IMG/VR virus record: IMGVR_UViG_3300044630_006293
Coordinates: 146,832 to 210,831 of that record
Reading direction: 5' to 3' (one strand)
Length of the DNA: 64,000 nt
The notes under the pieces: generated by a model
The model's input: only the letters and a program-made list of their open reading frames with translations
Told to the model about the DNA's origin: nothing
The model's database searches: none
Program-made: the position numbers and the translations under genes
Part shown: positions 3,412-3,623 of the stretch, piece by piece
Layout of the letters: each line of letters opens with the position of its first letter
How positions within the stretch are numbered: position 1 is the first letter of the stretch

Positions 3412-3610
3412 TTTGGTGTCGCTCCTTTCGTATTGGGTTTGCTAGTCTAAGTTGAAGACCAGCATTAGCATCGCGCAGGTTGCGAAACCGAAGATGAACG
3501 GACAAATACGAAATGCCCGCTCGACACTTAGCAGTGGTGCCTTCTCCGACTTCACAGTATAACTGTTAGGTGGGGATTCTCCCCCTGCCCGGATTGTGTT
3601 GCGGGCATGG
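3412..3610 (-). promoter_or_regulatory. structured 5' leader (riboswitch candidate) of transglycosylase gene
   Basis: ATGCCCGC/GCGGGCAT stem (3601-3608 with 3513-3520); second stem TTTCGTATT/AATACGAAA (3505-3513 with 3426-3434) abutting the AAGGAG RBS. Confidence 0.55.
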
Positions 3611-3614
3611 TATT

Positions 3615-3623
3615 AGTATAGCA
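3615..3623 (-). promoter_or_regulatory. extended -10 promoter (TGcTATACT)
   Basis: Matches primary-sigma extended -10 consensus just upstream of the structured leader. Confidence 0.6.

What the first reader, a model, noticed from the sequence alone, without database searches (positions are those of the whole stretch)
3412..3623. Two-domain structured leader on an Rpf/SLT gene: riboswitch candidate
Seen: extended -10, then a ~95-nt domain closed by ATGCCCGC/GCGGGCAT, then a second domain whose closing stem runs into the RBS and contains GCTGGTCT/AGACTAGC. It includes GGGGGAGAATC and CTGCTAA, loosely recalling ydaO motifs (GGGGTGAATC, CAGCTAA). Established: c-di-AMP (ydaO) riboswitches control rpf genes in Actinobacteria. 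Inference: a variant or new riboswitch coupling cell-wall hydrolase expression to host state.
Basis: partly seen in the sequence, partly recalled or inferred. Interest (0 to 1): 0.6.

Follow-up and report, generated by a model that had tools for sequence, protein, structure and literature searches.

The report
New structured leader on phage transglycosylase
A roughly 195-base folded RNA leader, conserved in a group of giant lake-water phages of actinobacteria, sits in front of their secreted cell-wall-cutting enzyme gene and hides its ribosome-binding site; it matches no catalogued RNA family (not the c-di-AMP riboswitch), and what it senses is unknown.

Summary
The feature is real, but it lies on the minus strand. 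An extended -10 (3623-3615) precedes a ~197-nt leader (3608-3412) for a secreted Rpf-like plus SLT transglycosylase (2557-3411).

I collected 57 distinct homologous leaders from ~45-270 kb lake-phage contigs. There is one copy per genome, and all six genomes tested encode WhiB, so these are actinophages.

Covariation supports hairpins P1-P6 and a helix that pairs the Shine-Dalgarno sequence with an upstream anti-SD. A 12-bp helix (GAAGUCGGAGA/UCUUCGGUUUC) closes a three-way junction. It is invariant in sequence and shares its 3' strand with the outer part of the SD-sequestering helix, which suggests a two-state translational switch.

Comparison does not favour the long-range ATGCCCGC/GCGGGCAT stem, because both arms sit in local hairpins.

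No Rfam 15 family matches the leader, even at E<=10. That includes c-di-AMP/ydaO and cobalamin.

The leader is the only stretch that aligns at nucleotide level between distant members, whose proteins have diverged to about 30% identity.

Verdict: a new, well-supported cis-regulatory RNA motif and a plausible riboswitch candidate with an unknown effector. It is not a ydaO member.

The parts
3615..3623 (-). Extended -10 promoter element (TGcTATACT). The -35 is weak.
   Evidence: Read. TGnTAnnnT is conserved 4-7 nt upstream of AUGCCC in most of 57 relatives. The consensus scanner does not call a full promoter.
3412..3608 (-). Whole leader RNA, from the predicted 5' end (A3608, 7th nt after the -10) to the base before the start codon.
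   Evidence: Covariance model hit 3409-3611(-), 97 bits. An RNA-library contig covers 3362-3583 and none covers 3584-3900 (low depth, not proof).
3586..3607 (-). P1: 5'-terminal hairpin UGCCCG / CGGGCA with a 10-nt loop. The sequence is invariant except for the closing pair.
   Evidence: 5 pairs never vary; the closing pair is GC 48, GU 6, AU 2.
3572..3585 (-). P2: hairpin GGGG(G)/CCCC with an A-rich loop. It is absent in the most divergent clade.
   Evidence: L028/L031-type members replace it with an unpaired A-rich stretch.
3554..3566 (-). P3: hairpin ACAGU-UAU-ACUGU.
   Evidence: Compensatory changes in 5 of 6 pairs (CAG.../...CUG versus UAGAUA/UAUCUA versus AGAUACU/AGUAUCU).
3543..3553 (-). 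Pa 5' strand, GAAGUCGGAGA. It is purine-rich and SD-like.
   Evidence: Invariant in all 57 leaders, including those found with patterns that did not specify it. It pairs with 3484-3494.
3530..3541 (-). P4: hairpin GGCA-CCAC-UGCU, one arm of the three-way junction.
   Evidence: 3 of 4 pairs show changes on both sides.
3498..3520 (-). P5: hairpin GCGGGCA / UGUCCGU with a conserved UUCGUA-type loop.
   Evidence: one pair is GU 29, AU 13, GC 11; other pairs show double changes.
3484..3494 (-). Pa 3' strand, UCUUCGGUUUC. Its GGUUUC part is also the outer 5' strand of the SD-sequestering helix.
   Evidence: 12-bp helix with three conserved G-U pairs. Alternative pairing shown.
3472..3483 (-). Anti-SD segment GCAACCUGCGCG (UCGC, CCU and CG pair with GCGA, AGG and CG around the SD).
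   Evidence: The best duplex includes the SD core in 57 of 57 leaders. Covariation at the CCU:AGG columns and at CG[N]:[N]CG (UA 28, AU 8, AA 6).
3463..3468 (-). Conserved linker CUAAUG.
   Evidence: Nearly invariant. No pairing partner was established.
3440..3464 (-). P6: variable hairpin UGCUGGUCU / AGACUAGCA.
   Evidence: All 5 modelled pairs have changes on both sides.
3415..3431 (-). Pre-SD ACGAAA, the Shine-Dalgarno sequence (GGAG at 3425-3422), and GCGAcACC. This is the 3' strand of the sequestering helix.
2557..3411 (-). Regulated gene, 284 aa: signal peptide, then an Rpf-like transglycosylase domain, then an SLT lytic transglycosylase domain.
   Evidence: Pfam PF06737 37 bits (residues 39-115) and PF01464 43.6 bits (residues 186-279). 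Signal peptide read.

Best explanation
This is a previously uncatalogued cis-acting leader RNA of a clade of lake-water jumbo actinophages. It controls translation of their secreted peptidoglycan-cleaving enzyme.

The host RNA polymerase starts at an extended -10 promoter, so the RNA begins with hairpin P1. The leader folds into P1, P2, P3 and a three-way junction (Pa, P4, P5). A segment follows in which an anti-SD sequence (UUUCGC..CCU..CG) pairs with the Shine-Dalgarno region across hairpin P6.

The 3' strand of the invariant helix Pa (GGUUUC) is also the outer strand of the SD-sequestering helix, so the two helices compete:
- With Pa fully formed, only a short inner helix covers the SD.
- With Pa opened, a 12-14 bp helix buries the SD and the bases before the start codon.

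I infer that some effector binding the junction domain sets this balance, and so times production of a potentially self-lethal muralytic enzyme. A small molecule reporting host state is the leading candidate.

Shown: conservation, covarying stems, SD pairing, and the competition in sequence and in predicted energy. Inferred: that the switch operates, which state is 'on', and that the effector is a small molecule.
For: Family and copy number:
- 57 distinct leaders were found with five different anchor patterns. All were recognised by a model built from six of them.
- There is one copy per genome in six 171-268 kb phage genomes.

Structure:
- 96% of cells are paired against about 40% when partners are slid. 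25 of 51 pairs show double changes, against 17.4 in shuffles (0 of 500 reach it).
- An independent MAFFT/RNAalifold run gives the same helices.

SD sequestration:
- The SD core lies inside the best anti-SD duplex in 57 of 57 leaders.
- Compensatory changes occur in that helix.
- The two conformers are predicted within 0-5 kcal/mol in most members. For the window the values are -68.4 and -67.3.

Conservation beyond the protein:
- The leader is the only stretch that aligns at nucleotide level between distant members.
- The proteins share about 30% identity, or differ in architecture.
- No terminator lies in the leader, so control would be translational.

Expression and precedent:
- RNA-library contigs bridge the leader and the coding region.
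- rpf and cell-wall hydrolase genes of Actinobacteria are under riboswitch control (PMC10117811, PMC6009663).
Against: - No ligand, probing or expression data exist.
- The motif is known only in one phage clade, before one gene family. That narrow spread is more typical of protein-binding operators than of metabolite riboswitches.
- Most invariant bases lie in helix Pa rather than in junctions, and the junction has few unpaired conserved bases.
- Pa shows no covariation, so its existence rests on conserved complementarity alone.
- In the largest clade the SD is predicted to be paired in both conformers, so the on/off logic is not clear from folding.
- The alignment used for most counts was fitted to my structure, which inflates pairing percentages.
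- The RNA-library evidence is low depth and could be DNA carry-over.
Confidence: 0.55

Rival explanations
1. It is a divergent member of the ydaO/c-di-AMP riboswitch family.
For: The gene association fits: ydaO elements precede rpfA and other cell-wall hydrolase genes in Actinobacteria (PMC10117811, PMC6009663), and the host is an actinobacterium.
Against: - RF00379 gives no match at E<=10 in 601 nt around the leader, in the whole phage (the same search rings in control genomes), or in 13 relatives.
- The architecture has no pseudo-twofold symmetry. It is hairpins plus one three-way junction.
- The look-alike strings sit in a dispensable hairpin (P2, absent in one clade) and in a linker.
Confidence: 0.04
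2. It is a translational operator or processing site recognised by a protein: a phage or host RNA-binding repressor, or RNase III acting on the roughly 20-bp stacked Pa-P5 helix. It is not a metabolite sensor.
For: - Invariant sequence within a helix, including three fixed G-U pairs, suits sequence-specific protein recognition.
- The distribution is limited to one phage clade and one gene.
- Phages commonly use translational operators and RNase III sites in leaders (my own knowledge of T4 regA/gp32 and T7/lambda leaders). The csRNAs proposed to regulate phage GP32 are in PMC10690425.
Against: No candidate protein was identified. The overall size, with six helices, exceeds what most protein operators need. 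Invariance of Pa is equally explained by its double pairing role.
Confidence: 0.2
3. It is a constitutive structure: a 5' stabilising and translation-damping leader, or an RNA thermometer, that keeps output of a dangerous enzyme low without sensing a specific effector.
For: - A 5'-terminal GC hairpin (P1) begins at or within a base of the predicted first transcribed base (3608).
- The SD is paired in most predicted structures.
- The regulated product is a secreted muralytic enzyme.
Against: Simple damping does not need about 195 nt with a three-way junction, 20 invariant bases in Pa and conserved linkers across 57 variants. The mutually exclusive helices of similar energy suggest switching.
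Confidence: 0.15
4. Control runs through a leaderless mini-ORF. The RNA starts with an invariant AUG-CCC, and translation of this short frame remodels P1-P3 and so the downstream fold.
For: AUG lies at the predicted +1 in all 57 leaders. An open frame of 2-27 codons follows and ends before Pa in all but one. Leaderless translation is common in Actinobacteria (my own knowledge).
Against: Length, frame and peptide are not conserved beyond Met-Pro. One member has only two codons. The U and G of the AUG are paired in P1. The A can be explained as the initiating purine.
Confidence: 0.05

Closest known systems
ydaO / c-di-AMP riboswitch (Rfam RF00379)
   Same: A long structured leader in front of Rpf and other cell-wall hydrolase genes of Actinobacteria (PMC10117811). 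The presumed purpose is to tie muralytic enzyme output to cell state.
   Different: No model match. Different architecture. The Streptomyces rpfA element acts by transcription termination (PMC10117811), whereas this leader has no terminator and pairs its SD. This one is phage-borne.
RpfB RNA switch of Mycobacterium tuberculosis (PMC6009663; bioRxiv 10.1101/2024.07.19.603033)
   Same: A lineage-restricted leader on an rpf gene that can adopt two conformations. The preprint proposes a three-way junction as the ligand pocket and a narrow taxonomic range.
   Different: That switch is about 130 nt, uses an intrinsic terminator, and is reported to bind adenosylcobalamin only at millimolar levels. 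Its sequence was not on hand, so no direct comparison was made. This leader shows no match to any cobalamin model and has no terminator.
Candidate structured RNAs of phages (csRNAs of IMG/VR, PMC10690425; phage-associated motifs in PMC5737381)
   Same: A cis-regulatory structured RNA found by comparing uncultured phage contigs.
   Different: I could not check whether this motif is among the >10,000 unnamed candidates, because the supplement is not held. The main text mentions no transglycosylase-associated motif. It is not in Rfam 15.
SD-sequestering translational riboswitches and RNA thermometers in general
   Same: Three-element logic: an SD, an anti-SD, and an upstream purine-rich SD look-alike (GAAGUCGGAGA) that competes for the anti-SD strand.
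   Different: The sensor domain matches no known aptamer, and the effector is unknown.

Membership tests
ydaO / c-di-AMP riboswitch (RF00379) | Scores at or above the family covariance model's gathering threshold (38 bits). | tested here: not met
   No match at gathering score. None at E<=10 in 601 nt, in the whole 211-kb phage or in 13 relatives.
ydaO / c-di-AMP riboswitch (RF00379) | Pseudo-twofold symmetric fold with two ligand pockets (feature recalled from the literature). | tested here: not met
   The consensus structure is a row of hairpins plus one three-way junction. No internal duplication of the fold is seen.
ydaO / c-di-AMP riboswitch (RF00379) | Binds c-di-AMP. | not testable with these tools
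   Needs in-line probing or ITC.
ydaO / c-di-AMP riboswitch (RF00379) | Association with cell-wall hydrolase, transporter or osmoprotection genes. | tested here: met
   The downstream gene is always a secreted Rpf/SLT or SLT-like protein. This feature does not separate the family from others.
Cobalamin riboswitches (RF00174, RF01482, RF01689) | Model match, and a B12 box in the canonical order within a four-way junction. | tested here: not met
   No match to any Rfam family at E<=10. Strings recalling the B12 box and GCCACUG occur (AGUCGGAGA, CCUGCC, GCCACUGUGA) but in a different order and around a three-way junction. The resemblance is from memory only.
RpfB switch (M. tuberculosis) | Intrinsic terminator as the expression platform. 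| tested here: not met
   No terminator-like site in 2400-4000. P6 is followed by CAAACCC, not a U tract.
RpfB switch (M. tuberculosis) | Sequence or structure homology to the mycobacterial rpfB leader. | not tested
Riboswitch (generic kind) | Conserved multi-stem aptamer with covarying helices and invariant core bases. | tested here: met
Riboswitch (generic kind) | Expression platform with mutually exclusive pairings that involve the SD or a terminator. | tested here: met
   An SD:anti-SD helix with covariation. It shares a strand with Pa. That switching actually occurs is inferred.
Riboswitch (generic kind) | Direct, specific binding of a small molecule that changes expression. | not testable with these tools
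   Needs experiments.
Riboswitch (generic kind) | Recurrence in front of several functionally linked but non-homologous genes. | tested here: not met
   One copy per genome, always before the transglycosylase gene family. Only one hit among 185,579 species genomes, on a phage-like contig.

The most novel reading that the evidence does not exclude
A new riboswitch class carried by jumbo actinophages. Its three-way-junction aptamer would read a host small-molecule signal, such as a nucleotide second messenger or a cell-wall precursor. It would then open the ribosome-binding site of a secreted Rpf-type muralytic enzyme, so that the phage couples wall cutting (lysis, or waking of dormant hosts) to host physiology.
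Probability: 0.3. Interest if true: 0.75.

Novelty: new member of a known kind. Interest (0 to 1): 0.55.

Why it matters
Muralytic enzymes are dangerous to the cell that makes them. Actinobacteria are already known to place rpf genes under RNA switches. Here an abundant group of uncultured lake phages has its own elaborate and strongly conserved RNA leader on an Rpf-type gene. That points to post-transcriptional timing of wall cleavage during infection.

If the effector is a metabolite, this would be a new aptamer fold and a rare case of a phage reading host state through RNA. If it is a protein, it defines a new operator-repressor pair.

Either way, the motif is a compact, testable element: 197 nt, with a clear mutational design.

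Tried and rejected
Searches that gave nothing useful:
- blastn of the leader against 50,697 GenBank phages: no match.
- tblastn of the protein: only one distant SLT hit, in an Actinomycetia phage.

Family limits:
- Distant Rpf-domain homologues (L004-L008, about 35% identity) have no such leader, by eye and by the model.
- Eleven of twelve pattern hits in species genomes are chance matches inside unrelated, mostly high-GC DNA. So are five high-GC viral hits and 26 of the 80 listed metagenome loci, which gave no model match at E<=1.

Rejected structural ideas:
It appears in some predicted alternative folds, but comparison does not maintain it.
- A pseudoknot between the P5 loop (UUCGU) and ACGAA before the SD. 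It is compatible in most members, but the one variable position covaries with the anti-SD helix instead (U·U in 8 members).

Rejected family resemblances:
- Cobalamin-riboswitch look-alike strings: wrong order and no model match.
- Resemblance of GUGAAGUCG to the 16S rRNA decoding-site strand and of CUAAUGA to the fluoride riboswitch: judged coincidental (from memory, and no model match).

Other:
- The leaderless mini-ORF is not conserved.
- The supplement of the phage csRNA catalogue is not held, so prior listing could not be checked.
- I did not run the large protein searches, structure prediction or complex prediction. The protein's identity was settled by Pfam and the question concerns RNA.

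Full report
**Where and what.** The window is the last 64 kb of a 210,831-bp virus record with direct terminal repeats, with 35.8% G+C. The finding lies on the minus strand. ORF 2557-3411(-) encodes a 284-aa protein. It has an N-terminal signal peptide (…PSSPAQA/GTW, read from the sequence), an Rpf-like 'Transglycosylas' domain (PF06737, 37 bits) and an SLT domain (PF01464, 43.6 bits). Upstream of the start codon (3411-3409) lie a GGAG Shine-Dalgarno sequence (3425-3422) and about 195 nt of non-coding sequence. These are preceded by TGcTATACT (3623-3615), an extended -10. The upstream gene ends at 3650.

**Checking the observation.** The region folds better than shuffles (-72.8 kcal/mol, z = -3.1). 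In that fold, ATGCCCGC and GCGGGCAT are not partners. Each forms a local hairpin: P1 is UGCCCG/CGGGCA at 3607-3586, and P5 is GCGGGCA/UGUCCGU at 3520-3498. The simple sigma-70 scanner calls neither a complete promoter nor a terminator in 2400-4000, so the promoter rests on the extended -10 and on its conservation.

**Relatives.** The leader has no match in GenBank phages. I ran exact-pattern scans of IMG/VR with five different anchor combinations, one scan of metagenomes and one scan of 185,579 species genomes. I then screened the results with a covariance model built from six relatives with a hand-drawn structure (R1). This gave 57 distinct leaders. The window itself scores 97 bits (E about 1e-24), although it was not in the seed.

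Pattern hits the model does not recognise are high-GC or otherwise unrelated DNA, and their number is about what chance predicts. The only hit in a 'bacterial' genome is a 13-kb contig binned into a Cyclobacteriaceae MAG. It carries the same gene order (leader, SLT-like gene, phrog_4285 protein) as the phage, so it is most likely a phage contig.

The six near-complete genomes examined (171-268 kb) each carry exactly one copy, and all encode WhiB-family proteins. Among the control genomes WhiB was found only in Corynebacterium. Together with the Rpf domain, this places the hosts in the Actinobacteria. DNA runs that hold the region are lake-water metagenomes.

**Anatomy from comparison.** An unguided MAFFT/RNAalifold run on 14 leaders already gives the following elements:
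- P1, P2 and P3.
- A 12-bp helix, which I call Pa: (U)GAAGUCGGAGA at 3554-3543 paired with UCUUCGGUUUC(G) at 3494-3483.
- P5 with a 3-bp extension.
- P6.
- Pairing of CCU..CG (3479-3474) with CG..AGG, which includes the SD.
- P4 (GGCA/UGCU, 3541-3530), which becomes clear once sequences are aligned by structure.

Pa, P4 and P5 form a three-way junction with very few unpaired junction bases.

On the 57-sequence alignment, 96.0% of cells are standard pairs, against 36-47% when partners are slid by 1-3 columns. Twenty-five of 51 pairs show changes on both sides, against 17.4 ± 1.6 in shuffles (0 of 500 reach it). The 20-sequence set gave the same picture. Double changes are concentrated in P3 (5 of 6 pairs), P4 (3 of 4), P5 (4 of 6), P6 (5 of 5) and the CCU:AGG helix (2 of 3).

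A caveat applies: this alignment was fitted to my structure. However, the compensatory differences in P3, P5 and P6 are visible in the raw sequences. P2 is missing in the most divergent clade, so it is dispensable.

P1's 3' arm and P5's 5' arm are the same hexamer (CGGGCA). Because of this, P1's 5' arm is automatically complementary to P5's 5' arm. In the clades where the P5 arm reads CGGACA or GGACAU, P5's own partner accommodates the change (G-U becomes A-U), but P1 does not change, leaving a C·A mismatch in the long-range stem. The long-range stem does appear in some predicted alternative folds. It cannot be excluded as a minor conformer, but comparison does not select for it.

**Invariant parts.** P1 (apart from its closing pair), both strands of Pa, CUAAUG before P6 and ACGAAAG before the SD hardly vary. 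Pa contains three G-U pairs that never become G-C. This invariance is not only an effect of the search patterns:
- The first scan specified neither the Pa 5' strand nor most of the Pa 3' strand.
- The P1-anchored scans left the Pa 3' strand free. It varied in only two members (L049, L050).
- The scan left the Pa 5' strand free.

Members that lack all anchors would still have been missed.

**The ribosome-binding site is paired.** For each of the 57 leaders I computed the best duplex between two segments: the stretch from UCUUCGG to the CUAAUG linker, and the stretch from ACGAAA to the start codon. The best duplex includes the SD core in 57 of 57. Single-sequence z-scores are modest (median -1.6), because one strand is pyrimidine-rich and the other purine-rich.

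The helix is rebuilt with different letters in different clades:
- UCGC..CCU with AGG.GCGA.
- CUCAY with GUGAG.
- CAC with GUG.

It shows column covariation at CCU:AGG (CG 38, AU 12, UA 4; UA 40, CG 8) and at the inner CG[N]:[N]CG position (U-A 28, A-U 8, A·A 6). That last position decides against a tempting pseudoknot between the conserved P5 loop (UUCGU) and ACGAA. When the A before CG becomes U, the anti-SD strand compensates and the P5 loop does not.

**A switch?** The outer part of the SD helix (GGU.UCGC with GCGA.ACC in the window) uses the same GGUUUC bases as the distal half of Pa. I forced either Pa, or downstream pairing of GGUU, and compared the energies. The structures lie within 0-5 kcal/mol in most members (window -68.4 versus -67.3). 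The Pa 5' strand (GAAGUCGGAGA) resembles the SD region (GAAAGGAGCGA). The three elements therefore have the classic arrangement of SD, anti-SD and anti-anti-SD.

There is no terminator in the leader, so any control would act on translation. Which state permits initiation is unclear. In the largest clade the predicted Pa state still pairs the SD and start codon with CUGCGCG-UUUGCU.

**The leader is more conserved than the gene.** Between the window and members of four other clades, the only nucleotide similarity across promoter, leader and coding region is the leader. The downstream proteins are of two kinds: Rpf+SLT proteins of 268-322 aa, or roughly 190-215 aa secreted proteins. The short ones give only sub-threshold SLT/SLT_3 matches and share about 31% identity with the window's SLT domain.

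**Expression.** Four lake metatranscriptome runs, held only as contigs at depth about 2, contain pieces of the gene. Two contigs bridge the leader and the coding region (3343-3493 and 3362-3583). None covers 3584-3900. Longer RNA contigs carry relatives' leaders. This fits a start near 3608, but it does not prove transcription or locate the 5' end.

**Comparison with known families.** No Rfam 15 family reaches its gathering score anywhere in the 64 kb. With permissive thresholds, nothing but noise hits the leader in the window or in 13 relatives. The c-di-AMP model finds nothing in the whole phage, while the same search rings in control genomes. The element is therefore not a ydaO member, although the biological parallel is real:
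- ydaO elements precede rpfA and other wall hydrolase genes in Streptomyces and mycobacteria (PMC10117811, PMC6009663).
- A second, lineage-restricted switch precedes M. tuberculosis rpfB (PMC6009663). A preprint reports that it binds adenosylcobalamin weakly at a three-way junction (10.1101/2024.07.19.603033).

I noticed strings in the leader that recall cobalamin-riboswitch motifs. They are not in the canonical order, and no cobalamin model matches, so I dropped that idea. A catalogue of more than 10,000 unnamed phage structured RNAs from IMG/VR exists (PMC10690425). Its text mentions no transglycosylase-linked motif and its tables are not held, so I cannot exclude an unnamed prior listing.

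**Judgement.** Well supported: this is a conserved, covariation-backed cis-regulatory leader that pairs its SD. Inferred: it is a switch, and a small molecule flips it. For a riboswitch speak the size, the junction, the invariant cores, the competing helices and the precedent on rpf genes. Against it speak the narrow distribution, the single gene context and the placement of the invariant bases in a helix. Those last points fit a protein operator or RNase III site equally well. I put a metabolite riboswitch at about 0.3 and a regulatory SD-sequestering switch of some kind at about 0.55. The remainder goes to a protein operator or processing site (0.2), a constitutive or thermal structure (0.15), a leaderless mini-ORF mechanism (0.05) and ydaO membership (0.04).

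Noticed in passing
window 3608-3552 (minus strand); all 57 leaders: The RNA is predicted to start with an invariant AUG-CCC. A short open frame of 2-27 codons follows (18 in the window: MPATQSGQGENPHLTVIL). It is not conserved in length, frame or sequence. It could be a leaderless mini-ORF in an actinobacterial host.
   Followed up: partly
window 3591-3586 and 3519-3514 (minus strand): P1's 3' arm and P5's 5' arm are the same hexamer, CGGGCA, in most members. Why two hairpins share a strand is unexplained.
   Followed up: partly
window 1013-1870 (minus strand); L042 2658-3458: A phrog_4285 'transposase'-annotated protein lies downstream of the transglycosylase gene, both in the window and in a distant relative. 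It is therefore a conserved neighbour rather than a stray insertion.
   Followed up: partly
window 221-658 (minus strand): A 145-aa ORF with several hydrophobic stretches and no PHROG match lies about 2 kb downstream on the same strand. It might be a holin-like membrane protein.
   Followed up: no
G000:C1:134737-134919 (outside the window); G001-G005: WhiB-family genes, one to three per genome (up to four matches listed), occur in all six jumbo phage genomes. This marks them as actinophages despite about 36% G+C.
   Followed up: yes
L016 2263-2335: A tRNA gene (69.8 bits) lies about 2.3 kb upstream of the leader in a related 205-kb phage.
   Followed up: no
window 3472-3504 in RNA runs X16-X18: Metatranscriptome contigs of 439-1626 nt at higher depth (about 6) match only the conserved 33-nt core and carry relatives' flanks. 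Leaders of related phages are therefore present in lake RNA libraries.
   Followed up: partly
L028, L031, L129 and similar members (clade E): In this clade the TGnTATACT element lies about 25-30 nt upstream of AUGCCC instead of 4-7 nt. Either the RNA has a longer 5' tail there or a different -10 is used.
   Followed up: no
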